IMG/VR virus record: IMGVR_UViG_3300020810_001156
Location: 188,604-252,603 of that record
Length of the DNA stretch: 64,000 bases
Direction: 5' to 3' (one strand)
The notes beneath the pieces were generated by a model that saw only the letters and a list, made by a program, of their open reading frames with translations, searched no databases and was not told the origin of the DNA. Numbering within the stretch: the stretch's first letter is position 1; every line of letters starts with the position of its first letter. The translations under genes were made by a program, and so were the position numbers. This document shows, one piece after another, positions 12,577 through 29,431 of this stretch.

Positions 12577-13193
12577 AAGTAATCATAGGTGGTATGGGGT
12601 TGAGTGGTAGCACTTTGTGTTATAATATATTTAGAGTTTTAAGAGATAACTCTGAATTGAATTATGAAGTCATAAAGATACATGAATATAATCATGCAGC
12701 TACTATGGGAAAAACTATTTTTATGATTAGAGATTTAAGAGATACTGTTGCATCTATGTTAAGGAAAGACCCAGAAAGATGGAATGGTGATGTTGAAGAA
12801 GCATCTAAGTATCAAATGATGTGGTACTATGATACTTGGAAAGATGTAAATAAAGATATTGTTTGGAAATATGAAGAGTATAAATCGAATCCATATGAAC
12901 ACACTTACTCAGCTATTAGTAAATTGGGATTGAATGTATCATATGATTTAGTAAAACAGGTTATAGATACTTGTGAAAATATAAAAGATATGAATATTCC
13001 ACATCACCAAGATTTTATACAAACTGAAGAAGAAGCTATTTTATGGGAAACCACAAAGATGAGTAAAAAACATATTACCAATGGTGGTAAGATTGGTGGA
13101 TATAAAGAATATTTAACCGAAGAGCAAATTAGATTTATTGAAACAAAATATAAATACTTTTTTGAAGAACAAAATTATCAGTTAGATTATTAA
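12573..13193 (+). CDS. Sulfotransferase-like protein
   Basis: SGST PAPS loop, RDLRDTVAS, KYEE, GKIGGYK..L. Confidence 0.7.
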   Translation: MKVIIGGMGLSGSTLCYNIFRVLRDNSELNYEVIKIHEYNHAATMGKTIFMIRDLRDTVASMLRKDPERWNGDVEEASKYQMMWYYDTWKDVNKDIVWKYEEYKSNPYEHTYSAISKLGLNVSYDLVKQVIDTCENIKDMNIPHHQDFIQTEEEAILWETTKMSKKHITNGGKIGGYKEYLTEEQIRFIETKYKYFFEEQNYQLDY

Positions 13194-13197
13194 AAAT

Positions 13198-13923
13198 ATG
13201 AAAGTAGCACTTTGTTTACATGGCTTATTTGATTCTTTGACAGATGAAAATTCAAAGGGATTGGATGGTTATAATCATATCAAAAAAAATATTTTGGATG
13301 TGGTTGATACCGATGTATTTGTACACAGTTGGGAAATTGAAAAAATGGATGAGATTACTAAATTATATAATCCAAAATCTTCCATATTTGAAGGACAGAA
13401 AGATTTTACTAATATAATAAACAAAAACAAATTAAACACATTATCAGCTCCACCAAGACCACCATTTAGTGTTTTATCTCATCTTTATAGTGTAACTGAA
13501 TCTATGAAGTTGGCATTTAATAGTGAGGTTGAATATGATATTATCATTAAGGCAAGATTTGATTTAGGAAGAATTAATAGAAGAACATCTGGGCCGGGTA
13601 GAGGTAATCCATATCCAGTTCAATGTATCAATTTTCAAACTGATATTGAAAAAGATAAGATTTATATGGCGAATTGGCAACACTTTCATATGGGACCTGC
13701 TGATATGTGGTTTTATGGTTCATCAAAAGTAATGAATCCTTTCACAACTTTATACAAATCGGTAGAAAAAAATATGAAGTTAGGTGGTGAGTTTCATCAA
13801 TTCGCTACATCAATAGAAGGTAATCCAAATGATTTATCGAATGCTATTGCATTTTATAAATGGTGGATGATAGGAAATGGATTATGGAATAAAAAAATAA
13901 AATTAGATACAATATGGGAATAA
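13198..13923 (+). CDS. Putative glycosyltransferase (KVALCLxG / RFD family)
   Basis: KVALCLHG, DVFVHSW, YDIIIKARFDL; paralogous to ORF 52879 and to the C-half of ORF 34338. Confidence 0.6.
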   Translation: MKVALCLHGLFDSLTDENSKGLDGYNHIKKNILDVVDTDVFVHSWEIEKMDEITKLYNPKSSIFEGQKDFTNIINKNKLNTLSAPPRPPFSVLSHLYSVTESMKLAFNSEVEYDIIIKARFDLGRINRRTSGPGRGNPYPVQCINFQTDIEKDKIYMANWQHFHMGPADMWFYGSSKVMNPFTTLYKSVEKNMKLGGEFHQFATSIEGNPNDLSNAIAFYKWWMIGNGLWNKKIKLDTIWE

Positions 13924-14612
13924 ACGTACCTTTAATAATTTATACACATTCGGATTATAAAGATGTGTGGAAACTTTTATTTGGTCAGTTAAAAAAATAC
14001 TTACCAAATCAAAAAGTATATGTTTTAAGTGATTCTAATGCAGAAGAAATACCATCGAATTATACTACAATAGTTTACGATGATTCTAAAGTTTATACTG
14101 ATAGATTAAAACAATGTCTTTCTCAGATTAATGAAGATGTGGTTCTATTTCAGCATGAGGATATGGTTCTTTTTAATGAACCTAAATTTGAATTGTTTGA
14201 TAAGTACATAGATTATGTTAAAAATGAGATGGTTGATAGTGTTAAGTTGATTTATGTCCAAGAAAACGATGTGGTATCTGAATTAGATTCTACATTAATT
14301 TCTAATTCATATTCTAAATTTTCTATTCAACCTACTTTGATAAAATTAAAAAATTTCGTATCTTTGTTAGATTCAACCGAACCTTTAAATATTTGGGATT
14401 TTGAATTAGCAGTTCCTGCTGAAGGAAAACACTATATGGTAAGATTGGGTGATGAGAAAAAACGAGGATTATATCACTCTGATAGTATCATATATCCTTA
14501 CATAGCAACTGCTATTACAAAAGGAAAGTGGAACTATGGTGAATATTCATTTGAATTCGATAAATTATTTAATGAATATGGTATTATACCATTTGAAAGA
14601 GGAATTTCATAA
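13914..14612 (+). CDS. Putative GT-A glycosyltransferase
   Basis: HSDYKDVW, FQHEDM, IWDFE, KGKW. Confidence 0.5.
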   Translation: MGINVPLIIYTHSDYKDVWKLLFGQLKKYLPNQKVYVLSDSNAEEIPSNYTTIVYDDSKVYTDRLKQCLSQINEDVVLFQHEDMVLFNEPKFELFDKYIDYVKNEMVDSVKLIYVQENDVVSELDSTLISNSYSKFSIQPTLIKLKNFVSLLDSTEPLNIWDFELAVPAEGKHYMVRLGDEKKRGLYHSDSIIYPYIATAITKGKWNYGEYSFEFDKLFNEYGIIPFERGIS

Positions 14613-15220
14613 TGAATAAAATAAAATTTGATATTGGTGCTAATAGTGGAAGTGATACTAGAAGAATGGCTTCGGATGGTTCTATTGTTTACGCATTTGA
14701 ACCAACACATGAATTATTAATGAATCATCTCTGGCCACTTTCTAATCAGAATCCAAATATAAAAGTTATACCATTTGCGGTTGATGTTAAAAACTCATTC
14801 CAAACATTCAATATTTCTGCAAATAGAGATTGGGGTTGTAGTAGTTTATATGAGTTTTCCGATGATATAGAGAAGAAATGGCCAAACAGACCCGATTTCA
14901 AAAAAACTCATTCTTATGAAGTTCCTACAATAACTTTATATGATTTTTGTAATTTGTATAACATAGATAGGATTGATATGTTACACATAGATGCACAGGG
15001 TAATGATTTTAATGTTCTATTGAGTTTAAAAGACAAAATATCAATAGTTAAAGAAGGGGTGGTTGAAGCATCTGATAAAGTTGATTTATACAGTGGAGCT
15101 ACCAATAGAATAGAATACATAAGATATTTTTTAATATCGAATGGATTTAAGATTGTAAAAGAAACACCTAACGATGTTGTAGGTGCCGAAGTTAATATAA
15201 GGTTTATAAAAAATGATTAA
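14612..15220 (+). CDS. FkbM-family methyltransferase
   Basis: DIGANSG, AFEP, HIDAQGND. Confidence 0.88.
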   Translation: MNKIKFDIGANSGSDTRRMASDGSIVYAFEPTHELLMNHLWPLSNQNPNIKVIPFAVDVKNSFQTFNISANRDWGCSSLYEFSDDIEKKWPNRPDFKKTHSYEVPTITLYDFCNLYNIDRIDMLHIDAQGNDFNVLLSLKDKISIVKEGVVEASDKVDLYSGATNRIEYIRYFLISNGFKIVKETPNDVVGAEVNIRFIKND

Positions 15221-16577
15221 GTTAGTTATATTTGATTTGGATGGTGTTCTTGTTGAAGCAAAAAACATCCACTATGATGCACTCAATGAAGCTTTGGGTG
15301 AACAATACGCAATTAGTTGGGCTGAACACCTATCAACTTACGATGGATTAAAAACCAATCAAAAGTTGGAGATGTTGAGTGAGATAAAAGGATTACCAAC
15401 CGAACTACACAAAGAGATTTGGGAAGGTAAACAAAAATTGACATTACAAAAGTTGAAAGAGTTAAAACCAAACCAAACTCTACAATCGGTAATGAACGCA
15501 TTGGTTGAGGATGGATACAAAATAGCAGTTTGTTCCAATTCAATCAGAAAGACAGTTTTGACTGTACTTTCAAAGTTGGGTATTATGGAGTTTATGGATT
15601 ACATCATCTCAAACGAAGATGTACAAAACTCTAAACCACACCCTGAGATGTATTGGAGAGCAATCTCAAAGATGGGATGTTTACCATCTGAAACTCTAAT
15701 CGTAGAGGATTCACCTTATGGGTTACTTGCAGCATCTCGTTCTAACGCTCATGTGTTGAGAGTTAGAAATCCACAAGAAGTAACCTACACAAACATATTT
15801 AAAAAATTAACTGAAATAGAAATGGGACAAACAAATGATAAACCAAAATGGGTGGATAATAAGTTAAATGTATTAATTCCAATGGCTGGAGCTGGTAGTA
15901 GATTCCAACAAGCAGGATACACATTTCCAAAACCACTAATTGATGTGGAAGGTAAACCTATGATTCAGGTCGTGGTAGAAAATCTAAACATCGAAGCAAA
16001 TTATATCTATGTAGTTCAGAAATCACATAGGGAGAAATTCAATTTGGATACCTTACTTAATCTTATTACTCCTAATTGTAAGATTGTAGAAGTAGATGGT
16101 ATTACCGAAGGAGCAGCTTGTACTGCACTTTTGGCTAAAGAACATATTGATAACGATAATCCATTATTCTTCGCTAACTCAGACCAATTTGTAGAATGGG
16201 ATTCAAATGAGTTCTTCTACAAAATGAATGAGAACGATGCTGATGGTGGTATCCCAACATTCAAAGCAACTCACCCAAAGTGGTCATTTGCTAAGTTGGA
16301 TGAAGATGGTTTTGTGACCGAAGTGCAAGAGAAAAACCCAATCTCAGATTTAGCAACAGTGGGTTTCTATTATTGGAAACATGGTTCTGATTTTGTGAAA
16401 TACGCTGAAGAAATGATTGAGCAGGATATTAGAGTAAACAATGAATTCTATGTTTGTCCTGTTTACAACAACGCAATTAAAGGTGGATTAAAGGTGAGAA
16501 CATTTGATGTACCAAAGATGTGGGGACTTGGAACACCTGAAGATTTGAATAGATACTTAGAGAATTATGGTAAGTAG
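15213..16577 (+). CDS. HAD phosphatase fused to sugar nucleotidyltransferase
   Basis: FDLDGVL, SKPHPE and EDS in the N-half; IPMAGAGSRF..PKPLI and LGTPEDL in the C-half. Confidence 0.88.
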   Translation: MIKLVIFDLDGVLVEAKNIHYDALNEALGEQYAISWAEHLSTYDGLKTNQKLEMLSEIKGLPTELHKEIWEGKQKLTLQKLKELKPNQTLQSVMNALVEDGYKIAVCSNSIRKTVLTVLSKLGIMEFMDYIISNEDVQNSKPHPEMYWRAISKMGCLPSETLIVEDSPYGLLAASRSNAHVLRVRNPQEVTYTNIFKKLTEIEMGQTNDKPKWVDNKLNVLIPMAGAGSRFQQAGYTFPKPLIDVEGKPMIQVVVENLNIEANYIYVVQKSHREKFNLDTLLNLITPNCKIVEVDGITEGAACTALLAKEHIDNDNPLFFANSDQFVEWDSNEFFYKMNENDADGGIPTFKATHPKWSFAKLDEDGFVTEVQEKNPISDLATVGFYYWKHGSDFVKYAEEMIEQDIRVNNEFYVCPVYNNAIKGGLKVRTFDVPKMWGLGTPEDLNRYLENYGK

Positions 16578-17256
16578 TGATAACAAATATACCAAAATGC
16601 AAAAGGGTGCGTATAGAAGTGGAACTTCTAACCATCCTGAGCATAATGGTAATCCCGATTATTGGAATATTCTTTTAGGTGATTTAAAAGATAGAGATAG
16701 TTGGGTAAATAAAGTTGGTTTAGATTTTGCTTGTGGTAAGGGTAGAAATGTAACAAATATGTTATCTTTATCCGATTGGAAACGAATTGATGGTATTGAT
16801 ATCTCAGAAGCTAACATTGTTTATTGTAAGGAAAATTATAAAGGACAAGATAGTGATTGGTATGTAAATAATGGAGTTGATGTATCTCAATTGAAAAATA
16901 ACGAATATGATTTCATCATGTCAACCATCGCACTACAACATATTCCAGTATATGATATCAGAAAATCACTAATAACCGATTTACTTAGAACTTTGAAACC
17001 AGGTGGAATATTTTCATTCCAAATGGGATATGGTCAGGAAATAAAACCAAATGAAAATAGATATCCATACCACACAAACCATTATGATGCTGGTGGAACT
17101 AATTCACATTCTGATGTGAGGGTACAAAGTGAATCTGAAATTATAGAAGATTTAACAAACATTGGATTTATCAATATAGAAACATATGTGAGAGATACAT
17201 TCTCAGATAATGGACATCCTCAATGGATATATGTAAAAGCTTATAAACCAGAATAA
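16567..17256 (+). CDS. Class I SAM-dependent methyltransferase
   Basis: LDFACGKG, GIDIS, LQHI, LKPGG. Confidence 0.85.
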   Translation: MVSSDNKYTKMQKGAYRSGTSNHPEHNGNPDYWNILLGDLKDRDSWVNKVGLDFACGKGRNVTNMLSLSDWKRIDGIDISEANIVYCKENYKGQDSDWYVNNGVDVSQLKNNEYDFIMSTIALQHIPVYDIRKSLITDLLRTLKPGGIFSFQMGYGQEIKPNENRYPYHTNHYDAGGTNSHSDVRVQSESEIIEDLTNIGFINIETYVRDTFSDNGHPQWIYVKAYKPE

Positions 17257-18486
17257 ATGAAAAGAATAACATTTGTAATACCTTGTAGAAGTAATCTACC
17301 ATATCTACAACAAGCCGTAGGTTCTATTGAAGAACACTATGGTAATTCGCATGATGTGGTAATCTTAGATGATGCATCTGATGATAATAGTTGGAATTGG
17401 ATTACTGAATACTCAGAAGGTAGGGATAATATAATCGCTTATAGAAACGAAGGACCTGATAGAGTTGGACACACTGTATTGTATGATGTTGGTTTTGATT
17501 TAGCAAAAACCGAAGTAGTATCAATTCTACACTCGGATATGGTGGTAACACCAAACTATGTGGAAAATATGTTGAAACACTTAGAAGTAAAAAAGGTAGT
17601 TTCAGCAACTCGAATTGAACCACCACTTCATCCACCTGGTCCTGAAAAGTATGTACAAAACTTTGGATTAGAAGTAGATGAGTTCTCAGAACAAAAAGAA
17701 AACTTTTTAAACTTCGTATCACAAAAGGAAATAGAAAATGAGGGTAAAGTTACTGATGGTATATTTGCACCTTGGATGATGTACAAAGAAGATTTTGTTG
17801 ATATTGGTGGGCATGATTTCTTATTCGCACCAATGGAGTTAGAAGATTCTGATATCTTTAATAGATTTTTTCTAAATGGATACGAGTTGATTCAAAGTAG
17901 AGATGCATTTGTATATCATATGACTTGTAGGGGTAGTAGGTTCAAAGATGGAATTGAAATTGAAAAAGAAATTCCACTACCCGATGGCACAATTTGGTAC
18001 AAACCAAAAGATTCCGAAGAGTACACTATTCTAAGACAACACAAATTTAGAGAATGGTGGAGAAAGTGGCATACTGATGTATTACATGATGAATTTATGA
18101 TGCCAATCGTTCCAAGTAGATATGATACTGGATTTATTGTTAAAAATTGTAATACTCAAATTCTATCCATCTTAGAACCTTGGTGTGATACAATCTATGT
18201 TGATTGTGATTACAAAGCATATGTAGATGCTGAAAACGAAAAATCTGAATATGATATATCGGAATCGGTTAAACCATATGATAATGAAAAGAACAATCAC
18301 ATATTGATTTCATTTGATGCAAGTAAATTAACAAATCAACACTTTACTGAATTCATCAAACAATTACCATTCATCATTGAAGAAACTGGTCAAACTGGTT
18401 CATTTAATTGGGATATCTTTCAAATAGATATTATCTCTTTAGAAGAAGTTGATATGATTAAACCACATTTTAAAAATATATTTTAA
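17257..18486 (+). CDS. GT2 glycosyltransferase
   Basis: FVIP, DDASDD, HSDM, EDSD. Confidence 0.85.
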   Translation: MKRITFVIPCRSNLPYLQQAVGSIEEHYGNSHDVVILDDASDDNSWNWITEYSEGRDNIIAYRNEGPDRVGHTVLYDVGFDLAKTEVVSILHSDMVVTPNYVENMLKHLEVKKVVSATRIEPPLHPPGPEKYVQNFGLEVDEFSEQKENFLNFVSQKEIENEGKVTDGIFAPWMMYKEDFVDIGGHDFLFAPMELEDSDIFNRFFLNGYELIQSRDAFVYHMTCRGSRFKDGIEIEKEIPLPDGTIWYKPKDSEEYTILRQHKFREWWRKWHTDVLHDEFMMPIVPSRYDTGFIVKNCNTQILSILEPWCDTIYVDCDYKAYVDAENEKSEYDISESVKPYDNEKNNHILISFDASKLTNQHFTEFIKQLPFIIEETGQTGSFNWDIFQIDIISLEEVDMIKPHFKNIF

Positions 18487-19364
18487 TGAAAAATAAATCA
18501 ACTTTAGTATGTATGCATGTAATGCCTCAAGAGATAGAGATGTTCATACAACTAATAAATAATTATAAATTATCTCTTAAACATTTAGATGATAGTGATG
18601 ATGTTACTCTAAAAATATCATTAAACTTAAATCCTGAGTTAACGGATTGGGATAATACAAACGTACCTAAAGATGAATTTATCGGTGTTTTTAATGATGT
18701 TACAAATGATATATCCAATTTAGATAAAGAAATTATAACCGATACTTCTTTGTGGGGAACAACCCAACAAAAAAGAGAAGCTATAAAATTAGATTATGAC
18801 CAATTTATCTTTTGTGATACTGATATAGTTTTACATCAACATCAATTAAAACATCAATTAAATGCAGCTAAACAATTAAATGGTATGTACATACTATCAC
18901 CAGCATTACCAAGATGGTGGGATAAAACATGGGATGTATTGGTATCATCAAATAGGTTAAATGGTGAATTTGGCGAAGCGTTTGAGAAAGAATGTATAAA
19001 AGATGTACTAACACAAAAATATACCGATTTATCTTTAAGACTGGTTGCACCAATTAAATTTGGTAATGGTATGCACACATTATATTCAAAGGAGTTTTGG
19101 GATTTCATAAAAATACCAGAATCATTTGGTGGATATGGGCCTGAAGATACTTTTGCTATGTATGCATCCCATAACGCTATTGTAAGTAAACAATACCCAA
19201 TAAAACAGTATGTATTAGATGGTATCTATATAACTGAAGATTATACTCATAGAATCCCAAGCTTTAACGATAACTTTACTTCTTTTAATAAAAAAGATGA
19301 ATTCTATAAAAAAGCAGAATCTCTCTTTGATAAAGAAATGGATAACTTTTTACAAAGAATCTGA
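18486..19364 (+). CDS. Putative GT-A glycosyltransferase
   Basis: CDTD, GYGPED. Confidence 0.55.
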   Translation: MKNKSTLVCMHVMPQEIEMFIQLINNYKLSLKHLDDSDDVTLKISLNLNPELTDWDNTNVPKDEFIGVFNDVTNDISNLDKEIITDTSLWGTTQQKREAIKLDYDQFIFCDTDIVLHQHQLKHQLNAAKQLNGMYILSPALPRWWDKTWDVLVSSNRLNGEFGEAFEKECIKDVLTQKYTDLSLRLVAPIKFGNGMHTLYSKEFWDFIKIPESFGGYGPEDTFAMYASHNAIVSKQYPIKQYVLDGIYITEDYTHRIPSFNDNFTSFNKKDEFYKKAESLFDKEMDNFLQRI

Positions 19365-19738: not shown

Positions 19739-20329
19739 ATGGAAAAGTTAAAAAGGTATATCGTTGAAAACTATGATGGACAATTCACTTGGAAACAATT
19801 AGTAAGTGAAGGAATCCCCAAGTTGTTTTTGAAGATAGAGGCTGTCAAAAAGGAAATTGCAAGATTAGAGGCTGAAAGAAGAGAAGCTGTAAAACCTTGG
19901 AAAACCGAAAAAGACCCAAAAAAGAAAGAAAAAATCCTAAATGTACTTAGAGATTTAACTAAGAAGATTAACGCTAGACAAAAGAATCTAACGCAAATGT
20001 TAGATATGGAGGAGAAGTATATTTCTCAGATGGCTAAAGATACTGAGTTAGATGCTAAAGCATTTGATGGTGTTTTTGAAGATACTGATTTGGGACACCA
20101 AGACAATGAACCTGGTATGTTAAGAGCTGATTTAAGTATCATCGAAAGATATGCTGAGGAATTGGGTGAAATGATGAAAGATTTCGATGAAATGAATACT
20201 GAAATCGATTTACCTCATTGGTGGCAATCTAAAATCATCAAAGCAAAGGATTACATAGTTGGGGCTAAGCACTATTTAAGAGCTGAGTTAGAAAAAACTG
20301 ACGGTATATTACATAATAAAGATAAATAA
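19739..20329 (+). CDS. Hypothetical two-module protein, candidate head-internal protein
   Basis: Coiled-coil module, then GVFE|DTDLGHQDNEPGM...LPHWWQSKI..AKDY module. Confidence 0.5.
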   Translation: MEKLKRYIVENYDGQFTWKQLVSEGIPKLFLKIEAVKKEIARLEAERREAVKPWKTEKDPKKKEKILNVLRDLTKKINARQKNLTQMLDMEEKYISQMAKDTELDAKAFDGVFEDTDLGHQDNEPGMLRADLSIIERYAEELGEMMKDFDEMNTEIDLPHWWQSKIIKAKDYIVGAKHYLRAELEKTDGILHNKDK

Positions 20330-20331
20330 GA

Positions 20332-20646
20332 ATGCAACTAGAATCAATCTACGCAGTAATCATTACTCTTATCACAGTATTGGGTTCAGCAGGAGCTTGG
20401 AGATACTATGAAAAGCGTGCGCAAGAAAAGAAAGAAGAAGATGATTACATCAAAGATGATTGTGCGAAGAGAATAGATAGATTAGAAGAACTCTTAGAAA
20501 GAAGTTCAAGAGAAAAGGATGAACTTAGAGAGAAAATCTTAGAACTTACCAAAGATGTAGCCGAATTGACTATCAAAGTCAAATATCTTGAAATGGAAAA
20601 CAAAAGATTATTAGAATTAAACAATCAGATTCTAAATAAATCGTAA
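20332..20646 (+). CDS. Membrane-anchored coiled-coil protein
   Basis: N-terminal TM followed by heptad repeats. Confidence 0.6.
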   Translation: MQLESIYAVIITLITVLGSAGAWRYYEKRAQEKKEEDDYIKDDCAKRIDRLEELLERSSREKDELREKILELTKDVAELTIKVKYLEMENKRLLELNNQILNKS

Positions 20647-20651
20647 AAATA

Positions 20652-20683
20652 TTTGGATTTTTCCAAAAAATTTCGTATATTAG
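20652..20683 (+). promoter_or_regulatory. Bacteroidota-type promoter
   Basis: TTTG-N20-TATATTAG. Confidence 0.65.
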
Positions 20684-20684
20684 T

Positions 20685-21242
20685 ATGTTTATCAAAGAAC
20701 AAGAGGATATGATAGCTAGAAGTTTATTCACAGAATCAAAAAAACTCAGAGTATTTGATTTCGATGACACACTTGTTTTTACGAATTCTTACATTTATGT
20801 AAAAACTATTGATGGTAAAGAGAAAAAGTTAACACCTGGTGAATATGCTCTTTACAATGAAAAGCCAGGTGAAGAATACGATTTCAGAGATTTCTACTCT
20901 GTTCAAGAACCCCAAGAATTAAAAAAGATTACCAAAGTTCTTAAAAGAATAATCAATAAGAACAAAGGAGAGGGTGTATTCATTCTAACCGCAAGACCTC
21001 AAGCGGTAGATAAGCATGTACAAAGATATTTAAAAGATATTGGTATTAATCAAAAAATACCAGTAATAGGTTTACAATCTAATAACCCAAAAGATAAATC
21101 AGATTGGGTTGAAAAAAAGATTGATAACGAAGGTTATGATGATGTTTACTTTGCAGATGATTCTATTAAGAATGTTAATCAAATGAAAAAGATGTTAAGG
21201 GGTAAAAATATCAAATGGAGAGTTCAACACATTAAACATTAA
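20685..21242 (+). CDS. HAD-superfamily phosphatase (RNA-repair/PNK-phosphatase-like)
   Basis: FDFDDTL, ILTAR, K, FADDS..N; start may be ATG 20709. Confidence 0.75.
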   Translation: MFIKEQEDMIARSLFTESKKLRVFDFDDTLVFTNSYIYVKTIDGKEKKLTPGEYALYNEKPGEEYDFRDFYSVQEPQELKKITKVLKRIINKNKGEGVFILTARPQAVDKHVQRYLKDIGINQKIPVIGLQSNNPKDKSDWVEKKIDNEGYDDVYFADDSIKNVNQMKKMLRGKNIKWRVQHIKH

Positions 21243-21261
21243 AATCTTATATTTATAGTAT

Positions 21262-21510
21262 ATGATTAGATTAACCGAAATATTGAACGAAGGAAAAGAA
21301 CCTGAAATCATTACTCAATTAAGAGATGTATTGAAGAATGGGTATAAAACTCTTAAAGACCCAAAAAGTGGTAAGAGAATGAAAGTGGATACTTACTCAG
21401 CATCTGCAATCGTTGGTGTATATGATAAATTAAATCCATCTAATCAAGAAAAGTTTGTGAAGCAGGGTTTGTTGGGTATGCAATCATTAGCATTTAAATT
21501 TATAAAATAA
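21262..21510 (+). CDS. Small protein with MIRLTEILNE leader
   Basis: Leader shared with the next two ORFs; VDTYSASAI..VYDKLN..NQ module. Confidence 0.6.
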   Translation: MIRLTEILNEGKEPEIITQLRDVLKNGYKTLKDPKSGKRMKVDTYSASAIVGVYDKLNPSNQEKFVKQGLLGMQSLAFKFIK

Positions 21511-21511
21511 A

Positions 21512-22189
21512 GTGATTAAGTTAACTGACATATTAAATGAAGATTGTTGGAAGGGCTACAAACAAATTGGTGGCAAAATGAAGAATGGAAAGATGGTGCC
21601 AAATTGTGTTCCTGAATCGGTTGAAGAAAACTCAATCAATGAAGCTTCAATGACTGTTTCAATTGCAAATGTTGTAGATGAACTTTTTCCAAAGGAATTC
21701 TTTTGGGTTTATAATCCACAAGATAAAGAAAGAGTAAAATCTGTGATTGGTGATTTGGTTAGAACTCTAAATACTTTCTACAAAAAGCAAGGTATTAAAG
21801 TTAGATTTACAGATTCTAATATTAGAATGAAAATGTACACTAAAGAATCGGCAAGAGAGGATTTAACATCTTCAGAGAGATTAGAACTATATAAGTTATA
21901 CTCAAAGGCGATGAAAGCAATGCCACAATCTCCAAACCAAAAAAAGATTATCAAACAAATTAATGTGTTAAGAACCAAAGCTGGTATGAAACCATTAAAA
22001 GAGGTAACTTTGAATGAGATTGGTATTTTTAATATACAAAGTTACACAAAGGGGATTTTACCTGCAGGATATATGGATACAACAACTCCTCAGAAAAAAG
22101 AAAAATATCGTTCAACAGTTAGAGATTTAATGCAAACATTAAATTCTTTTTGGAAAAGAAATAATATACCATTTAGAGTAAGAAAATGA
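21512..22189 (+). CDS. Modular protein with MIKLTDILNE leader and CWKGY..VPNCV module
   Basis: GTG start; internal NSINE and TLNE linkers; duplicated module. Confidence 0.6.
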   Translation: MIKLTDILNEDCWKGYKQIGGKMKNGKMVPNCVPESVEENSINEASMTVSIANVVDELFPKEFFWVYNPQDKERVKSVIGDLVRTLNTFYKKQGIKVRFTDSNIRMKMYTKESAREDLTSSERLELYKLYSKAMKAMPQSPNQKKIIKQINVLRTKAGMKPLKEVTLNEIGIFNIQSYTKGILPAGYMDTTTPQKKEKYRSTVRDLMQTLNSFWKRNNIPFRVRK

Positions 22190-22524
22190 TAAAGTTAGAT
22201 GATTTATTACATGATATCGTAAACCATCCACTAAACGAAGATTTGAGAAAGTGGTTTGGTAAAGGAAAGACTGGTTCATCATCTGGTGGTGGTTGGGATA
22301 GATACGGAACTGATGGACAGAAGTTAGGTAAATGTGGCGATGGTGAAGAAGGTGATGCTTATGCAGCTTGTTTATCTAAAGAAAAGGCAGCTAAGTTAGG
22401 ACCTAAAGGTAGAGCTGCATTTGTAAAAAGAAAAAGAGCTGACCAAAAGAAAGCTGGTGATACTAAAAAAGGTGGAAATAGAAAAAAGGGTAAGACACCT
22501 ACCTTTTCAAAAACAGGTGCATAA
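22186..22524 (+). CDS. Basic protein with MIKLDDLL..PLNE leader
   Basis: EDLRKWF...CG...ACL...KRK module typical of large phages. Confidence 0.6.
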   Translation: MIKLDDLLHDIVNHPLNEDLRKWFGKGKTGSSSGGGWDRYGTDGQKLGKCGDGEEGDAYAACLSKEKAAKLGPKGRAAFVKRKRADQKKAGDTKKGGNRKKGKTPTFSKTGA

Positions 22525-22535: not shown

Positions 22536-22796
22536 ATGGGTAAAAAATTAGTTACTATAAAGGTAATAAAGGGAGATATTAATCGAGCTCTTAAAAAGTT
22601 TAAACGAGCGTGTTTTGATTCTGGACACTTACAAGAACTTAGGGAAAGGCAAACATATACTAAACCTAAAACAGTAAGAAGAACGAAAAAGTTAGAAGCT
22701 ATCAGAAGGCAAGAGTGGGAAACTTTAAAAGAAAAGATTGATGGTGGGGATACCTCACTAAAATTATCTCCAAGAAAGAAAAAGAAAAAAAGATAA
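22536..22796 (+). CDS. rpsU: Ribosomal protein bS21
   Basis: I.V..GDINRALKKFKR...G.LQELRERQ.Y.KP..RR. Confidence 0.85.
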   Translation: MGKKLVTIKVIKGDINRALKKFKRACFDSGHLQELRERQTYTKPKTVRRTKKLEAIRRQEWETLKEKIDGGDTSLKLSPRKKKKKR

Positions 22797-22813: not shown

Positions 22814-25300
22814 ATGGCAGATAATGTAAAAATATCAGATTTAACGGAATTAATATCGGGCTCTCTTAGAGATGTTACGATTTTTCCGGTTGTAGATGGT
22901 GGTGCAACCCAAAAAGCTACATTACTATCTCTACAACAATATCTTGCTGATACTTTAGCAACTGATAGTGAATTAACAGCACAAATTTCTAATGTAAATT
23001 CTACAATAAATGGATTGGATACAGATGATATAAGTGAGGGTTCAACTAATCAGTATTATACAAACGCAAGAGTTAATCAAATAATTCAAGGATTAACAAT
23101 CATAAGTGGTTCGGGTCAAATTGAAGATTTAGGATTTATTTCTTCAGGTACTAATATTGGACCACTAAATATATTTACAGCATCTTACTACGAAGATTCT
23201 GCATCCTTTGAGACAAGAATTTTAGCAATATCTGCTAGTAGTGGAGATACTACGCCACAAGGAACTGTATCTAGTTCACAACAAATTACCGATTTAGGGT
23301 TTATACAATCATCAACAATTGATTCTTTATTTATTGCAGATAGATTACCAATTGATATTCTATCTTCATCAGAACAATTAGGACAATTAATTGCAATTAA
23401 TGGTGGTACTAATGTAACTGTTACTTCTGGTAGTGGTGACCAATTAAGTATTGAAATTTCATCTACTGGTGGTGGAGGTGGCGGAGTTGAATATGATTCT
23501 GAATATGAAATCGTTTCACAATCAAACATTACTGATGAATCTAATGCTAGATTGAGTGGTATGTTGATAAGAGCTAATGATGAAACTACATTCGCTAACT
23601 TCTCAGCATCTGTTGCTGCTGGTGCTGGTGGAGGTGGTGGTTCTACTGATTACATTTCAAATGTATCAAACACAATAGCTCATACAATTTCATTTACTGG
23701 AGTTGGTTCAGCATTTAATGGAAGTATAAATCTACCCGATGGTATTGTATCATCATCAACTCAAATTGAAGATTTGGGATTTGCTGGTGGTGGAGAAAAC
23801 ATTATAGTTAGTGGATTACAAGCATATACTCAATCATTAAAATCAGTAGCTATAATTTCTGGCTCACAACAAATTACTGATTTTGGATTCGTTTCAGAAT
23901 CATCAACAACTATTCCACAGGGAACTATTTCTGGTTCACAACAAATTACCGATTTAGGATTTCTTAGTAGTTCAGCCGATTTAACTGGTATTACATCATC
24001 TGCTGGTGTTGTACTTGCTGACGCTGATAACACTGGATTTGATACATCATTTGTAGGAGAGAACCCATCTAACTTATATTATACTGATGCTAGAGTTGAA
24101 ACTCACTTAGGGGTTATAGGTTTATTAACAGGTTCACAAGGATTAGCTAGTGGTTCGGTAACTTCATCCGCACAAATTAATTATGGTGAAATTAGAAATA
24201 TTCCTAAATTTTGGGGTGATGGCGTAACTATATCATCTGGTTCATCAGGTGATACTGCAAATTATATCCAAATTACATCAGCTGGTGGTGGTAGTGGTAC
24301 ATTATCATCCGAGTTCTACTCATTTACCGCATCATATGAATTAGAAAAAGTTAATTTTATAACTGGTTCTTCACAAATTGAAGCTTTAGGATTTGACCCT
24401 AATGCTGGTGAAGTTGTAACTTTAAACGCTTGGACTGGTTCTGGTGGAGCATTTGGTATATTCTCACAATCAGTAGTAAACCAAATTGAAAACTTAGAAA
24501 CTGGTTCACTTACTGATGATTTCAACTCATTATTGGAAAAAGATTTATTCTCAGGTTCTGCTCAAGTTAATTACGCACAAATACCTGATATACCAGACTT
24601 TGTAGCTGGTCCTGGTATAGTAATCGCAATTAGTGGTAGTTCATTTGGACAAACCTTTGAAATTAGTAGTAGTGCAGCTTCTGGAGATTTTACAACATTA
24701 ACTGGAGTTCCAGAAGGATTAGTATCATCATCAACTCAAATTGAAAATTTAGGATTTGCAACAACTGGATACGCTGATGGTGTTGGTACAACAACTTCAC
24801 AATCATTAGAATCAACATTTAATGGATTTAGAGGTGATATAGGTGCTATTCAAGCCGATTACGCTAATTTGGGTGGTAACACATTTACTGGTTCTCAATT
24901 AATCAAAGCTTTAGTAACAGTTGATGAGGTTTATGTAACTGGTTCATTATCTTTAACTTCTGGTGAGGGTAAAATAAAAGTTAATACTGGGATTCCTTCG
25001 GATATAGTACAAATGACTGGTTCATTTAAAGTAACGGGTTCGATTGAAGCAGATGAGTTTATTGTAGGTTCTGCAGGAACACCAACCATTTCATCAGCAA
25101 CTAATATTGAAGTATCGGCATCGGCTGATATTAATATGATAGCTCAGGAAGTTAACATTACTGATGTATTAACAATAACTCCAAGAACAACAACACCTTC
25201 ATCACCATCATCTGGTAGTTTTATTGTAAGTGGTAGTGGAGCAACTATAAAGCCATTCTTCTATGATGGCAATCAATGGCAAGAGATATCATTCGTATAA
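22814..25300 (+). CDS. Ser/Gly/Thr-rich virion structural (tail fibre-like) protein
   Basis: N-terminal VKISDL, TDDISEGSTNQYYTNARV motif, about 10 S[GS]S.Q[IV]..LGF-type repeats, C-terminal FYDGNQW. Confidence 0.7.
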   Translation: MADNVKISDLTELISGSLRDVTIFPVVDGGATQKATLLSLQQYLADTLATDSELTAQISNVNSTINGLDTDDISEGSTNQYYTNARVNQIIQGLTIISGSGQIEDLGFISSGTNIGPLNIFTASYYEDSASFETRILAISASSGDTTPQGTVSSSQQITDLGFIQSSTIDSLFIADRLPIDILSSSEQLGQLIAINGGTNVTVTSGSGDQLSIEISSTGGGGGGVEYDSEYEIVSQSNITDESNARLSGMLIRANDETTFANFSASVAAGAGGGGGSTDYISNVSNTIAHTISFTGVGSAFNGSINLPDGIVSSSTQIEDLGFAGGGENIIVSGLQAYTQSLKSVAIISGSQQITDFGFVSESSTTIPQGTISGSQQITDLGFLSSSADLTGITSSAGVVLADADNTGFDTSFVGENPSNLYYTDARVETHLGVIGLLTGSQGLASGSVTSSAQINYGEIRNIPKFWGDGVTISSGSSGDTANYIQITSAGGGSGTLSSEFYSFTASYELEKVNFITGSSQIEALGFDPNAGEVVTLNAWTGSGGAFGIFSQSVVNQIENLETGSLTDDFNSLLEKDLFSGSAQVNYAQIPDIPDFVAGPGIVIAISGSSFGQTFEISSSAASGDFTTLTGVPEGLVSSSTQIENLGFATTGYADGVGTTTSQSLESTFNGFRGDIGAIQADYANLGGNTFTGSQLIKALVTVDEVYVTGSLSLTSGEGKIKVNTGIPSDIVQMTGSFKVTGSIEADEFIVGSAGTPTISSATNIEVSASADINMIAQEVNITDVLTITPRTTTPSSPSSGSFIVSGSGATIKPFFYDGNQWQEISFV

Positions 25301-25311
25301 AATAAACACCT

Positions 25312-26922
25312 ATGAGAACCTACAATGTAATACTCAAAAAAGGTGTAGATTATGAATCGTTTTGGGATGATATGGAAAATGAAAACGATGGGGGTAATCT
25401 TTATATCCCTAATCGTAGAGTAGATTCTCCTAACCTTAGACCAGATTCACAAAGACAAACTTGGTACACTCTTTCGGATGAAGAAGCTGAAACTGTAAGA
25501 AATGATGAAAGAGTTCTTGCAGTTGAAATTCCACCCGAAGATAGGGATGATATCGTAATTGGACATCATGCAATCCAAGAGGGTGTATTTACCAAAACAA
25601 CTTCTGATAGTGGTAATTATCAAAATTGGGGATTAATAAGAACTTTATCTAAATCAAATAATTATGGTAGTTCAAATACCTCACCAACTACTGAATATCC
25701 ATATTCATTAACTGGTAAGGGGGTTGATGTTGTAATTCAAGATAGTGGTATTCAAATAGACCATCCAGAATGGGCAGATAGATTTGAATCGGTAGATTGG
25801 GATACATGGGGTGCTTTTACACAATCATCAAATCACGATAGAGATTATGATGGACATGGTTCACATTGTGCTGGTATTGTAGCAGGTAAAACATTTGGGT
25901 ATGCTAAAAAAGCAAAAGTATATCATCAAAAGATAAGTGGATTAGAAGGTAGTGGTGATAGTGGAACTGGTATTTCACCAACCTATGCATTTGATGCTAT
26001 TAAAGGTTGGCATAATGCTAAATCAGTTGACCCAAATACTGGGTATGTTAGACCAACTGTGGTAAATATGAGTTGGGGTTATCTGAGAACATTTACAAAT
26101 GCTCAAATATCAAACATAAATTATAGAGGTACTGATTATAGTGGTACTGATATTGATACTACAACTGAAAGAGAAAACAATTACGGATTGATGTATTCAT
26201 TGTATTCAGTATCAGGTCCAACATATGCTAGTAATTTAAGAATAGCATCGGTTGATACTGATATTGAAGAGTTGTTAGAAGCGGGTGTTCATGTGTTTGT
26301 TGCTGCTGGAAATAGGAGTAATAAAGTAGATGAGAGTGGTGGTGCGGATTATGATAATAATTATACACACACATCATCGGGTACAACTTACTATCACAGA
26401 GGTTCTTCTCCATATGGTGATGCAGGGCAAGATGGAACTGGACCAAGAGCAATCATAGTTGGTAATATGGATTCATCAGTACATGATACCACAACTGATA
26501 GAAAAGCAACATCATCGGAAACTGGACCTGGTGTTGATATCTATGCACCTGGTACAAATGTTATGAGTGCAACTTCTAATACAAATAAGTGGGGAAGTGG
26601 TTCTCAAAATTATTATTTGAATTCATCATTTAAGCAAACTAATATATCTGGTACATCTATGGCATCTCCTCAAGTTGCAGGTGTTGCTGCATGTATTTTA
26701 GAATTATATCCACAATGGACACCATCTCAATTAAAACAATGGTTACTGGATAATGCAGGTTCTGCAATCTTAAATACTGGTACTGATAATGATTGGACAA
26801 ATGATAGAAGTTTGAAAGGTGGAGCAGAAAAAGTATTACATTTACCATTTACTTCATCAGAACCTGCAAAAATAAGTGGTTTCGATAATTTAACCTTTAA
26901 CATAAAAATCAAAGAACAATAA
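25312..26922 (+). CDS. Subtilisin-like S8 serine protease
   Basis: Triad motifs VVIQDSG, DGHGSHCAG and SGTSMASPQVAG; oxyanion AAGN; N-terminal prodomain. Confidence 0.92.
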   Translation: MRTYNVILKKGVDYESFWDDMENENDGGNLYIPNRRVDSPNLRPDSQRQTWYTLSDEEAETVRNDERVLAVEIPPEDRDDIVIGHHAIQEGVFTKTTSDSGNYQNWGLIRTLSKSNNYGSSNTSPTTEYPYSLTGKGVDVVIQDSGIQIDHPEWADRFESVDWDTWGAFTQSSNHDRDYDGHGSHCAGIVAGKTFGYAKKAKVYHQKISGLEGSGDSGTGISPTYAFDAIKGWHNAKSVDPNTGYVRPTVVNMSWGYLRTFTNAQISNINYRGTDYSGTDIDTTTERENNYGLMYSLYSVSGPTYASNLRIASVDTDIEELLEAGVHVFVAAGNRSNKVDESGGADYDNNYTHTSSGTTYYHRGSSPYGDAGQDGTGPRAIIVGNMDSSVHDTTTDRKATSSETGPGVDIYAPGTNVMSATSNTNKWGSGSQNYYLNSSFKQTNISGTSMASPQVAGVAACILELYPQWTPSQLKQWLLDNAGSAILNTGTDNDWTNDRSLKGGAEKVLHLPFTSSEPAKISGFDNLTFNIKIKEQ

Positions 26923-26959: not shown

Positions 26960-29431
26960 ATGGGATGGAGTGAGAAATATAAGAAATCAATAGATTGTAA
27001 CAACCCAAAAGGTTTCAGTCAAAAAGCCCATTGTGCTGGTAAAAAGAAAAACGAAGATATGGTATTTGAAGAAATAACCGAAGATATTCTAAATGAAAAG
27101 CTGATTACCTATGGTAATAGAAAACCATATGGTCAAGTAGTTTTTATGGCAGGTGGAGCTGGTAGTGGTAAAGGATTCGCTATCAAAAACTTTGTAGATT
27201 CTGCATCTTTCAAAATTAGAGATGTGGATGAAATGAAGAAACAACTTCAAATTCTCAATAGATTAGGTAAATTAGATATTAGAAGTATCCTAAAAAAGTA
27301 TGGTAGAAATATCAAACTTAAAGATTTAGATTTAATCAGAAAGATTGAAAAGGATGGGTACAAACTTCAAAACTTTAATCTTAAAAATCCAGACCATGTA
27401 ATGGCCCTTCACATTTTAGTAAAGGCAATGGGTATTAAAGATAATACTTTAGAAAAACTATTATTGGGTAAAAATAATCCTGAAACTCTTCCAAACATTT
27501 TATTTGATATCACCGCAAAGGATGTAACCGATATCACTTCAGTTGTTCCAAAATTAAAAGAAGTTGGATACAAAGCAGATAATATTCACTTAACTTGGGT
27601 ACTTACAAATTATGTAACTGCAATGGTTAATAATAAGAATAGAGCTAGAATGGTACCTGAGGATATCCTTTTAAAAACACATGAAGGTGCTGCAAATACT
27701 ATTTGGGGATTAGTAACTAAAGCTCTTCCAAAAGGAATGAATGGTAGAGTTGATGTAATCCTTAATAACCCAGAACACACTGTATTCTATACTGATACAG
27801 ATGGTAAAACTATTAGTGGTGGTGTAAAGGGATTCCTCTCACTTCCACTTAAAAAAGAAAAGGGTGGTATCTTTCCAGAAAAAGTTTGGAAAGATAAGTT
27901 ATTCAATTGGGTTAAAGATAATGCACCAGAATCAATCACATCAAATATGAAAGAATCAGTAAACGAAGGTAAGAAATCCAAAGATTCTACCGGTGTAAGA
28001 AAAGCAGAAGCTATTCATAATAATGCAGATACAATCATTGATTTGGTACTTAAAGATAAAAAAGATGTTAAAGAAGTAGTAAGTGTAATGGGGCCTGTAT
28101 TGATTAATGCAATAAAAGCAACTTTAAAACATAAGTTCAAACCAATTACTGGTAATGAAGATGCATTAAAAAAGTTTCAATCTAAACTAAAAGATTTCCT
28201 TAAATTCACAGAAGCGTTAGTTAAAAAACCATCAAAGGTTGGTGTTAAAAGACTTGAAACTATGCACAGAGAATGGTGGAATTGGAACCATGGTGCAGAT
28301 GTAGTATTAAATGGAAAAATAGGAAATACTATCATTGAATCAGTAAACGAAGGAAAATTCAAACCATCACAAGTTCGTTCAGCAATCTCAAAAGTTAAAA
28401 AAGGACTAATGAGAAAGTGGAAACAAAAAGGTGGATACGAAAACTTTGGACAAAAAGAACTATCTCAAATGAAAGATAAGTTTGATTACAATGCATATGG
28501 AGATAAGGATGAAAGAGAAATTTCACATATGTTAGATGCATTTGATAATTGGGCAATGAACTACGATGGTAATATGAGAGAAGCAAGAAGGTCAGTAGTT
28601 CACAAAGCTGCAAAGAAAGGAAGTTTTCCAGTATCTTTAGTAGTGGTTAAAAATGGTAAAGTAATTGACCAAGAGTTAGTAAAAACTCCAGAAGCTGTAC
28701 CTGCTGCATTTAATGTTATTCAATCAAAACACAAAGGAGCTACTGTTCATATTGAAGATAAAACAGGTAAAAGATTATTTTCAGAATCAATAGATGAGGG
28801 TATGTTCTCCCTTATAGACCAAATCAGAGATGAATCTAAGAATGTTAAAGATTTTATTAAGAATGTTCTTTCTGATAGAAACTTTAAGGATATGAAAAAC
28901 GATAAACAATTTATCCAATACTTAGGTTCTATCTATGAATCGGTAAACGAAGCAATGGATATCAATGACCCTATCTTAGTAAGATTGAGAGCATCAGCGA
29001 TTGAAAAAGCTGAAAAAGAAAAATTAGCAAAAATAAGAGCAGCCCAAATGAAGAAAAACCAAATGGCTGCTAAAAAACTCCAACAAGCAGAACTCAAAAT
29101 CAAAGCACTCAAAAAGAAGAGAGCAGAGGTAATGAGAGATATGGAACAAGAAGCTGAAGCAGAAGGTGGACCAATCGCTGATAGATATGGTAACTTATTA
29201 AATAAGATTGATAACGATATCATCAAATTGGGAGGTAATCCAATGAGTGAATCAATCGAAGAAAGAATCAATCTATTCGTAGAAGAAAACGTACCAACTA
29301 AACCAGACAAATGGTCATATGCAGTTTCTCAAGCAAAAGAGAAATTTGATGTATATCCATCGGCATATGCAAATGCATGGGCTTCCAAGAAATATAAAGA
29401 ACTTGGTGGTGGTTGGAGAAAGAAAAAGTAA
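26960..29431 (+). CDS. Modular polyprotein-like protein containing a zeta-toxin/AAA_33-like P-loop kinase domain
   Basis: FMAGGAGSGKG, N..R.RMVP; modules separated by ESVNE, ESIDE and ESIEE. Confidence 0.65.
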   Translation: MGWSEKYKKSIDCNNPKGFSQKAHCAGKKKNEDMVFEEITEDILNEKLITYGNRKPYGQVVFMAGGAGSGKGFAIKNFVDSASFKIRDVDEMKKQLQILNRLGKLDIRSILKKYGRNIKLKDLDLIRKIEKDGYKLQNFNLKNPDHVMALHILVKAMGIKDNTLEKLLLGKNNPETLPNILFDITAKDVTDITSVVPKLKEVGYKADNIHLTWVLTNYVTAMVNNKNRARMVPEDILLKTHEGAANTIWGLVTKALPKGMNGRVDVILNNPEHTVFYTDTDGKTISGGVKGFLSLPLKKEKGGIFPEKVWKDKLFNWVKDNAPESITSNMKESVNEGKKSKDSTGVRKAEAIHNNADTIIDLVLKDKKDVKEVVSVMGPVLINAIKATLKHKFKPITGNEDALKKFQSKLKDFLKFTEALVKKPSKVGVKRLETMHREWWNWNHGADVVLNGKIGNTIIESVNEGKFKPSQVRSAISKVKKGLMRKWKQKGGYENFGQKELSQMKDKFDYNAYGDKDEREISHMLDAFDNWAMNYDGNMREARRSVVHKAAKKGSFPVSLVVVKNGKVIDQELVKTPEAVPAAFNVIQSKHKGATVHIEDKTGKRLFSESIDEGMFSLIDQIRDESKNVKDFIKNVLSDRNFKDMKNDKQFIQYLGSIYESVNEAMDINDPILVRLRASAIEKAEKEKLAKIRAAQMKKNQMAAKKLQQAELKIKALKKKRAEVMRDMEQEAEAEGGPIADRYGNLLNKIDNDIIKLGGNPMSESIEERINLFVEENVPTKPDKWSYAVSQAKEKFDVYPSAYANAWASKKYKELGGGWRKKK

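What the first reader, a model, noticed from the sequence alone, without database searches (positions are those of the whole stretch)
19739..22524. Shared N-terminal leader MI[KR]Lxx[IL]L..E: candidate capsid-targeting/cleavage signal
Seen: three consecutive, otherwise unrelated ORFs begin MIRLTEILNE, MIKLTDILNE and MIKLDDLLHDIVNHPLNE; neighbours begin MEKLKRYIVE and MIARSLFTE. Established: T4 internal proteins carry a ~10-residue capsid-targeting sequence ending in Glu, removed by prohead protease gp21, which cuts after (I/L)-x-E. Inference: this is the equivalent zip-code for loading cargo into the head for injection with the DNA.
Basis: partly seen in the sequence, partly recalled or inferred. 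Interest (0 to 1): 0.75.

Follow-up and report, generated by a model that had tools for sequence, protein, structure and literature searches.

The report
T4-style capsid address tag
Three small basic proteins of a large T4-related phage start with the same ten-residue tag, which most likely sends them into the assembling head and is then cut off by the head protease; this would let packaged proteins be predicted from sequence in many uncultivated phages.

Summary
Window ORFs 21262-21510 (82 aa), 21512-22189 (225 aa, GTG start) and 22186-22524 (112 aa) begin MIRLTEILNE, MIKLTDILNE and MIKLDDLLHDIVNHPLNE. They are otherwise unrelated. The strict motif is expected 0.0007 times at the N-termini of the genome's 282 genes and occurs 4 times.

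The window lies in a 252.6-kb T4-related phage. It encodes a gp21-type head protease with the catalytic motifs kept, a gp20 portal and a gp23 capsid protein. The fourth copy of the leader, and a looser fifth, sit on head-module proteins next to that protease.

The leader closely resembles T4's protease-cut propeptides: gp24 MAKINELLRE, Alt MELITELFDE. Codon choice shows selection on the protein, not the RNA. In relatives the 112-aa gene lies inside the head module. The same leader heads at least 82 different proteins in IMG/VR. Records carrying it have the protease as often as their completeness allows.

Best reading (about 0.7): a T4-like capsid-targeting propeptide cleaved after L-x-E. Injection of the cargo is untested. 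The two neighbours (MEKLKRYIVE, MIARSLFTE) do not belong. Kind: a new member of a known kind. I found no earlier description of this leader.

The parts
21262..21510 (+). Gene p82: leader MIRLTEILNE (nt 21262-21291) plus a 72-aa basic body (pI 9.8). The only [IL]-x-E sites lie in the leader.
   Evidence: In the homologue family A2, Glu10 is at least 90% conserved, P3 is mostly L/V/I, and the N-terminal extension varies from about 8 to about 80 aa.
21512..22189 (+). Gene p225 (GTG start): leader MIKLTDILNE (nt 21512-21541), a Cys-Trp...Pro-Asn-Cys-Val module (aa 11-44), then two copies of a domain of about 50 aa.
   Evidence: A relative has an ATG start and a single copy of the domain.
21635..21643 (+). 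Internal I-N-E (aa 42-44) just before repeat 1 of p225: a candidate internal cleavage site.
   Evidence: inference
22010..22018 (+). Internal L-N-E (aa 167-169) just before repeat 2 of p225: a candidate internal cleavage site.
   Evidence: inference
22186..22524 (+). Gene p112: an 18-residue leader MIKLDDLLHDIVNHPLNE (nt 22186-22239) plus a 94-aa Lys-rich body (pI 10.1). It overlaps the p225 stop by 4 nt.
   Evidence: In alignment A1, invariance starts at Glu18-Asp19 and the upstream part varies from 10 to 48 aa.
21249..21257 (+). ATATTTATA, a strand-biased intergenic motif and candidate promoter element, ending 4 nt before the p82 ATG.
   Evidence: 33 copies on the + strand against 2 on the - strand; 31 of the 33 are intergenic; copies also lie upstream of head and tail genes.
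22536..22796 (+). Ribosomal protein S21 gene, a conserved downstream partner of p112. It is not leader-bearing.
19739..20329 (+). p196 (MEKLKRYIVE): doubtful. It ends in I-V-E but has Arg at position 6 and an acidic body (pI 5.7). It is not a match to the leader.

Best explanation
The shared N-terminus is a T4-type capsid-targeting propeptide. It is a short amphipathic segment, consensus M-I-K/R-L-K/T-D/E-I/L-L-N/K-E. By analogy with T4, it would dock the newly made protein onto the scaffolding core of the assembling prohead. The phage's gp21-type serine protease would then cut after the Glu of the L-x-E site, leaving small basic proteins of 8-25 kDa (pI 9.8-10.1) inside the head with the DNA. 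Shown here: the motif, its specificity to N-termini, selection at the protein level, the protease gene with its catalytic motifs, the link to the head module, and the spread across a clade. Inferred: docking to the core, cleavage after Leu-Asn-Glu, residence in the virion, and, more weakly, ejection into the host with the DNA.
For: 1) Motif statistics: 0.0007 N-terminal matches expected, 4 seen. The relaxed motif hits only 5 ORFs genome-wide.
2) The genome has an S77/gp21 protease at 101242-101829 (E 4e-29; 32% identical to T4 gp21; GELDHP, GISSRG and GWDFV aligned). It also has a gp20 portal and a gp23 capsid protein.
3) The fourth leader (MIKLTDLLEAE, 310 aa) and a looser one (MKLRELIEDLIAE, 147 aa) flank that protease. 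In relatives most ORFs between the protease and the capsid gene start with the leader.
4) T4 propeptides read from NC_000866 are gp24 MAKINELLRE, Alt MELITELFDE, IPII/IPIII MKTYQEFIAE and gp22 MLKEQLIAE. The review PMC9026906 places targeting at residues 4 and 7 and processing at 8 and 10. These are the invariant positions here: L4 in 36/36, I/L7 in 36/36, L8 in 34/36, E10 in 36/36, though that set was selected with a regex fixing those residue classes.
5) Synonymous codons vary roughly as in the background, and there is no conserved upstream sequence.
6) In the p112 and p82 families, conservation begins at or next to the Glu, while the extension upstream varies in length and sequence.
7) The p112 homologue lies between the protease and the scaffold-like and capsid genes in 6 loci: directly upstream of S21, the scaffold-like gene and the capsid gene in five (L044, L046, L055, L068, L070), and downstream of the protease in L038, whose locus ends at p112.
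8) An IMG/VR pattern scan gave at least 120 stretches. Of 88 matches, 85 open an ORF of at least 40 aa, with 82 different bodies. The S77 protease was found in 7 of 17 leader-bearing records, whose summed CheckV completeness is 6.6.
9) A complete 173-kb genome again has three adjacent leader genes.
Against: There is no direct evidence: no virion proteome, no observed N-termini, no protease assay. In some p112 homologues the residue two before the junction Glu is Q, H, K or T rather than hydrophobic, so the invariant Glu-Asp may belong to the body and the cut may lie a few residues upstream. The bodies have no similarity to T4 internal proteins. The presumed scaffold has no detectable similarity to T4 gp22. 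Some leader-bearing proteins elsewhere are enzymes or have membrane-like segments, which is unusual, though not excluded, for head cargo. The three genes lie 107 kb from the head module in this genome.
Confidence: 0.7

Rival explanations
1. The leader is a protease-removed propeptide of prohead core or scaffold components only. These proteins help build the head and are then degraded or expelled. They are not cargo delivered to the host.
For: The leader also heads head-module proteins beside the protease. p225 has internal I/L-N-E sites in front of each repeat, like scaffold proteins that are chopped up. In T4, gp22, gp67 and gp68 are cut to fragments.
Against: p82 and p112 have no [IL]-x-E site outside the leader, so they would survive as intact basic proteins, as T4 internal proteins do. 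The leader sits on at least 82 different and variable bodies, including enzymes. That fits a changeable cargo set better than an essential scaffold.
Confidence: 0.15
2. The leader is a protein-level tag for something other than the capsid, for example recruitment to the phage's own GroEL/GroES, binding to a common partner, or controlled degradation.
For: The phage encodes GroES and GroEL. Leader-bearing proteins in relatives include kinase-like and exonuclease-like enzymes.
Against: This does not explain the likeness to T4 gp21 substrates, the terminal L-x-E, the enrichment next to the protease and inside head modules, or the co-occurrence with S77 proteases.
Confidence: 0.08
3. The conservation acts on nucleic acid: a shared translation-initiation or repressor-binding region, or a recombination cassette that moves genes about.
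For: The codons are very AU-rich. The N-terminal and internal copies in the 310-aa protein have identical DNA over 21 nt, which suggests recombination between leaders.
Against: Across 36 non-redundant leaders the Leu, Lys and Glu codons vary roughly as in the background. The substitutions K/R, D/E and I/L are conservative at the protein level. The 12 nt upstream show only A-richness. Recombination at leaders is better seen as a consequence than as the function.
Confidence: 0.04
4. The similarity is only a relic of tandem duplication, with no shared function.
For: The three genes are adjacent.
Against: The bodies are unrelated. The same leader is kept on dozens of unrelated proteins in distant genomes.
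Confidence: 0.02

Closest known systems
Capsid-targeting sequences of phage T4 internal proteins IPI, IPII, IPIII and Alt (Mullaney and Black 1996, as reviewed in PMC9026906 and PMC3012670)
   Same: An N-terminal signal of 10-19 residues shared by otherwise unrelated, mostly small basic proteins. It ends in Glu with Leu or Ile two residues before. A gp21-type protease is encoded in the same genome. The genes are partly clustered away from the head module. Hydrophobic residues sit at positions 4, 7 and 8 and an acidic one at 6.
   Different: The consensus differs (MIKL-K/T-D-I/L-L-N/K-E against MKTYQEFIAE). The bodies are not homologous. The signal is kept almost unchanged across a broad clade of uncultivated T4-relatives and on far more protein families. 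Some carriers look like multi-module chains with L/I-x-E at each junction. Function is untested here.
N-terminal propeptide of the T4 vertex protein gp24 (MAKINELLRE) and N-terminus of gp22 (MLKEQLIAE)
   Same: The T4 gp24 propeptide is the closest match to the leader seen here: the same or a similar residue at 9 of 10 positions against the internal copy (T)IKLTDLLKE of the 310-aa protein and the clade consensus, 8 of 10 against MIKLTDILNE. It is removed by gp21.
   Different: gp24 is a shell protein. No gp24 paralogue was found here: there is a single Gp23-family hit.
Long propeptides of ejection and inner-body proteins of phiKZ, 201phi2-1 and SPN3US (PMC5694885)
   Same: Head proteins are cut after Glu by a gp21-related protease, and paralogues share conserved N-termini.
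   Different: Those sites are A/S/G-x-E and the propeptides often exceed 100 residues. Here the residue two before the Glu is Leu and the leader is 10-18 residues, as in T4.

Membership tests
T4-type capsid-targeting sequence / gp21-cleaved propeptide | Lies at the extreme N-terminus and is about 10-20 residues long | tested here: met
   10, 10 and 18 residues, each at the first start codon
T4-type capsid-targeting sequence / gp21-cleaved propeptide | Ends in Glu with Leu or Ile two residues before (the gp21 cleavage motif) | tested here: met
   L-N-E in all three. Glu10 in 36/36 leaders of a set selected for it.
T4-type capsid-targeting sequence / gp21-cleaved propeptide | Determinants at residues 4 and 7 (targeting) and 8 and 10 (processing), as mapped in IPIII | tested here: met
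   L4, I/L7, L8 and E10 are the most conserved positions, compared with the mapping in the review. This shows conservation only, not function.
T4-type capsid-targeting sequence / gp21-cleaved propeptide | The same genome encodes a gp21-family (S77) prohead protease with its catalytic residues | tested here: met
   PF03420 E 4e-29; 32% identical to T4 gp21; PDB 5jbl E 1e-19; His, Ser and Asp motifs aligned
T4-type capsid-targeting sequence / gp21-cleaved propeptide | The signal is shared by otherwise unrelated proteins | tested here: met
T4-type capsid-targeting sequence / gp21-cleaved propeptide | The signal is sufficient to bring a protein into the prohead core | not testable with these tools
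   Needs a leader-reporter packaging experiment
T4-type capsid-targeting sequence / gp21-cleaved propeptide | The signal is removed by the protease, so the mature protein in the virion starts after the Glu | not testable with these tools
   Needs virion mass spectrometry or a protease assay. Indirect support only: conservation in the families starts at the Glu.
T4 internal proteins IPI/IPII/IPIII (homology of the bodies) | Sequence similarity of the mature parts | tested here: not met
   No Pfam or PHROG family links them. They share only small size and basic pI.
T4 gp22 scaffold (for the acidic 386-aa protein upstream of the capsid gene) | Sequence similarity to gp22 | tested here: not met
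   BLASTP E 80 and no PHROG hit. The assignment rests on position and composition only.
phiKZ-type propeptides | A small residue (A/S/G) two before the cleaved Glu, and propeptides often over 100 residues | tested here: not met
   The residue is Leu and the leader is 10-18 residues

The most novel reading that the evidence does not exclude
The leader is a clade-wide, portable address label. If so, the whole set of packaged, and perhaps injected, proteins of uncultivated T4-relatives could be read straight from sequence. That set would include enzymes such as zeta-toxin-like kinases and DnaQ-like exonucleases, and multi-module chains cut at internal L/I-x-E junctions. New cargo would arise by recombination at the leader.
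Probability: 0.35. Interest if true: 0.75.

Novelty: new member of a known kind. Interest (0 to 1): 0.55.

Why it matters
In T4 the capsid-targeting signal marks proteins that enter the host with the DNA and act first, such as the anti-restriction protein IPI and the host-polymerase modifier Alt. The same signal has been used to load foreign proteins into phage heads. A strongly conserved equivalent in a large, mostly uncultivated group of aquatic T4-relatives would do two things. It would give a sequence-only way to list candidate first-strike proteins in metagenomes; at least 82 different bodies turned up in a truncated scan. It would also give a ready-made tag for loading cargo into phages of Bacteroidota-type hosts. 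The host assignment is itself only a hint from the closest cultured relative and from signal peptides.

Tried and rejected
- **Pfam and PHROGs on the three proteins.** No informative family. There was only a match of p225 residues 9-48 to unnamed PHROGs and a weak hit for p112.
- **Protein-atlas look-alikes.** Only viral hypothetical clusters came up, a few of them carrying DUF5872 or DUF6321.
- **AlphaFold2 of p112 with 22 homologues.** Mean pLDDT was 54, too poor for a fold search. The leader was modelled as a helix, residues 4-13.
- **tblastn of p112 against GenBank phages.** Only three cyanophages matched. There the domain is fused into a 402-aa protein in the structural module.
- **The nearest cultured relative, Flavobacterium phage immuto.** Its head module does not use the leader. 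One hypothetical gene starts MIKLIDLLTE, and no proteome annotation is available.
- **A narrow DNA pattern on four large related records.** It found nothing because those records use M-K-L without the Ile.
- **Literature searches.** Searches for the leader strings and for capsid-targeting sequences in marine or Far-T4 phages found no prior description.
- **The neighbours.** p185 is a HAD-type hydrolase (DUF2608). Its F-T-E lies six residues before the catalytic motif, so I rejected it as a member. p196 is left as doubtful.
Full report
**Observation**

The window is bases 188604-252603 of a single 252,603-bp IMG/VR virus record. The record has 33% G+C, CheckV completeness 100%, and nearly all genes on the + strand.

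- 21262-21510: 82 aa, MIRLTEILNE.
- 21512-22189: 225 aa, MIKLTDILNE. It has a GTG start one base after the previous stop. A relative has ATG at the same place.
- 22186-22524: 112 aa, MIKLDDLLHDIVNHPLNE. It overlaps the previous stop by 4 nt.

All-against-all BLASTP finds nothing shared beyond the leader.

With this genome's amino-acid frequencies, the strict motif is expected 0.0007 times at the N-termini of 282 genes. It is seen four times. A relaxed motif scanned in six frames at every possible start codon gives exactly five ORFs, each at its first start.

**Genomic context**

The fourth strict hit is a 310-aa protein at genome 102382-103314 (MIKLTDLLEAE). The fifth, looser hit is a 147-aa protein at 99709-100152 (MKLRELIEDLIAE). 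Both lie in a T4-like head module with this order:
- gp20 portal (PF07230, E 2e-72)
- 287-aa protein
- 147-aa protein
- 356-aa protein
- gp21-type protease (PF03420, E 4e-29)
- 182-aa protein
- 310-aa protein
- DUF3008 protein
- a very acidic 386-aa protein
- gp23 capsid protein (PF07068, E 2e-76)

The protease is 32% identical to T4 gp21. It matches the solved gp21 structure 5jbl (E 1e-19). The GELDHP, GISSRG and GWDFV stretches align to the His, Ser and Asp motifs of gp21. Like T4 gp21 (MNEPQLLIE), it has L-I-E near its own N-terminus (MRNLLIE).

The capsid protein has L-D-E at residue 61, about where the T4 gp23 cut would align. This last point is inference.

**Comparison with T4**

I read the T4 sequences from the T4 record itself, not from memory:
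- IPII and IPIII: MKTYQEFIAE
- Alt: MELITELFDE
- gp24: MAKINELLRE
- gp22: MLKEQLIAE
- IPI: a 19-residue leader ending I-T-E

The leader here is very close to the gp24 and Alt propeptides. It has hydrophobic residues at 4, 7 and 8, an acidic residue at 6, and Glu at 10.

The review PMC9026906 reports that in IPIII targeting depends mainly on residues 4 and 7, and processing on residues 8 and 10. In 36 non-redundant leaders collected here, those are the invariant positions. That set was gathered with a regex that already fixes those residue classes, so these counts show which residue dominates within each class, not independent conservation:
- L4: 36/36
- I/L7: 36/36
- L8: 34/36
- E10: 36/36

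The mature parts would be small and basic: 8.1, 25.0 and 9.9 kDa, with pI 9.8-10.1. T4 internal proteins have pI 8.9-9.5.

**Protein-level or RNA-level selection**

The leader codons differ among the copies in this genome. Across the 36 leaders, Leu, Lys and Glu codons vary roughly as in the background. The 12 nt upstream show only A-richness. The substitutions seen are K/R, D/E and I/L. Selection therefore acts on the peptide.

One exception is informative. The 310-aa protein carries a second, internal copy, TIKLTDLLKE followed by GK, at about aa 243-252. Its DNA is identical to the N-terminal copy over 21 nt. In relatives the protein either ends at that point or continues with other modules. 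So leaders also serve as recombination joints.

**Relatives**

In IMG/VR relatives, the stretch between the protease and the DUF3008 protein holds a variable set of ORFs that each start with the leader. Examples are MKLKDLLPE, MKLKDILNE, MKLTQLLKE, MIKLKNLLSE and MKLTDILNE.

The 112-aa protein belongs to a large family, with 135 tblastn-confirmed matches in one scan:
- Invariance starts at Glu18-Asp19.
- The extension upstream varies from 10 to 48 residues.
- Many members have the plain 10-residue leader, for example MIKLKDLLSE or MILLRDILGE.
- One member joins the leader, the Cys-Trp module of p225 and the p112 body in a single chain.
- The residue two before the junction Glu is usually L, M, I or V. 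In some members it is Q, H, K or T, and those have another site a few residues upstream. The exact cut therefore cannot be fixed from sequence.

The 82-aa family behaves in the same way. Glu10 is at least 90% conserved, and one member has the leader, a 53-residue insert and a second V-N-E just before the body.

In six loci the p112 homologue lies inside the head module. In five of them (L044, L046, L055, L068, L070) it sits directly upstream of S21, the acidic protein and the capsid gene. In four (L038, L046, L068, L070) the protease lies upstream in the same locus. L038 ends at p112, so its downstream genes are not seen.

**Spread across IMG/VR**

The stretches held for reading contained 88 matches:
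- 85 of the 88 open an ORF of at least 40 aa.
- 71 have no upstream in-frame start.
- 82 different bodies follow the leader.

The bodies include zeta-toxin-like P-loop kinases and an RNase T/DnaQ-like exonuclease.

Seventeen leader-bearing records of at least 50 kb could be searched for the protease. Seven have an S77 protease. Their summed CheckV completeness is 6.6, so the count fits every such genome having one. The only complete record among them does have one.

That complete 173-kb genome again shows three adjacent leader genes, with different bodies, about 19 kb from its head module.

**Mechanism proposed**

- Shown: the motif and its specificity to N-termini, selection on the peptide, the protease with its catalytic motifs, the link to the head module, and the spread across the clade.
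- Inferred: the leader docks proteins onto the prohead core, the protease cuts after L-x-E, and the basic bodies stay with the DNA.
- More weakly inferred: the bodies are ejected into the host.

p225 may additionally be cut before each of its two repeats, at I-N-E44 and L-N-E169.

**Rivals**

- A role purely in assembly is the main rival. It is hard to separate from the best explanation without a virion proteome.
- A tag for another partner, such as the phage's own GroEL/GroES, does not explain the T4-like cleavage motif or the link to the head module.
- An RNA-level element is contradicted by the codon data.
- Plain duplication is contradicted by the unrelated bodies and the clade-wide spread.

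**The neighbours**

- p185 is a HAD-type hydrolase (PF11019, E 7e-11). Its F-T-E lies just before the catalytic DxD motif, so it is not a member.
- p196 ends its first ten residues in I-V-E, but it has Arg at position 6 and an acidic body. It remains doubtful.

**Novelty**

The kind is known: the T4 capsid-targeting sequence. The searches of the held literature found no description of this leader, nor of such signals in Far-T4 or marine T4-relatives.

I file it as a new member of a known kind. Its extra value is that the tag is nearly invariant across a large uncultivated clade.

Noticed in passing
window 22536-22796: A ribosomal protein S21 gene (PF01165, E 5e-15) follows p112 directly. The p112-S21 pair recurs in 6 related loci. 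In five of them it lies directly upstream of the presumed scaffold and capsid genes, and in three of those the protease is also seen upstream. Why an S21 gene travels with a head-module gene is unexplained.
   Followed up: partly
window 21659-21805 and 22031-22177: p225 contains an internal duplication of a domain of about 50 aa (33% identity, E 8e-10). Each copy is preceded by I/L-N-E. A relative has a single copy.
   Followed up: partly
genome 102382-103314 (outside the window; L003 10382-11314): The 310-aa head-module protein carries the leader twice, with identical DNA over 21 nt. Its last 60 residues form a helix module that other head-module proteins of relatives also end with. Some homologues stop right inside the second leader.
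   Followed up: partly
window 21249-21257, and 32 other + strand sites in the genome: ATATTTATA occurs 33 times on the + strand and 2 times on the - strand. Of the 33 + strand copies, 31 are intergenic, usually 1-65 nt upstream of a start codon, including head and tail genes. It is a candidate phage promoter element. In several cases it lies within 6 nt of the ATG, which would imply nearly leaderless mRNAs.
   Followed up: partly
related loci and proteins (L022, L045, L072, L084; P0021, P0023): A second type of N-terminal extension, roughly E-L-K-x-x-I-R-E-I-V-R-E, replaces the MIKL leader on homologues of the same bodies in other lineages. The 356-aa head protein here starts in a similar way.
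   Followed up: no
window 56278-58197: The phage encodes both GroES (Cpn10, E 1e-20) and GroEL (Cpn60, E 1e-75). T4 supplies only a GroES substitute (gp31) for folding its capsid protein.
   Followed up: no
window 44469-46445: A full TonB-dependent outer-membrane receptor gene (Plug plus beta-barrel, E 3e-35) with a signal peptide. This is unusual cargo for a phage and hints at a Bacteroidota-type host.
   Followed up: no
window 22814-26922: An 828-aa Ser/Gly-rich protein with a repeated motif, roughly S-S-Q-Q-I-T-D-L-G-F, and no family match. It is followed by a 536-aa subtilase (PF00082, E 7e-34) that also matches a PHROG annotated as tail fibre protein.
   Followed up: no
window 26960-29431: An 823-aa protein with a weak zeta-toxin-like P-loop at residues 57-81 and a strong match to the unnamed phrog_5268. 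Zeta-like kinases carry the MIKL leader in other IMG/VR phages. This one does not.
   Followed up: no
genome 110811 onward and 142082-153682 (outside the window): Two giant ORFs of about 4828 and 3866 aa lie downstream of the head module.
   Followed up: no
window 3933-19364: A long run of sugar-modifying genes, including a HAD plus nucleotidyl-transferase fusion at 15213-16577. An APS kinase lies at 29482-29967 and a CCA-adding/poly(A) polymerase-HD protein at 60508-62625.
   Followed up: no
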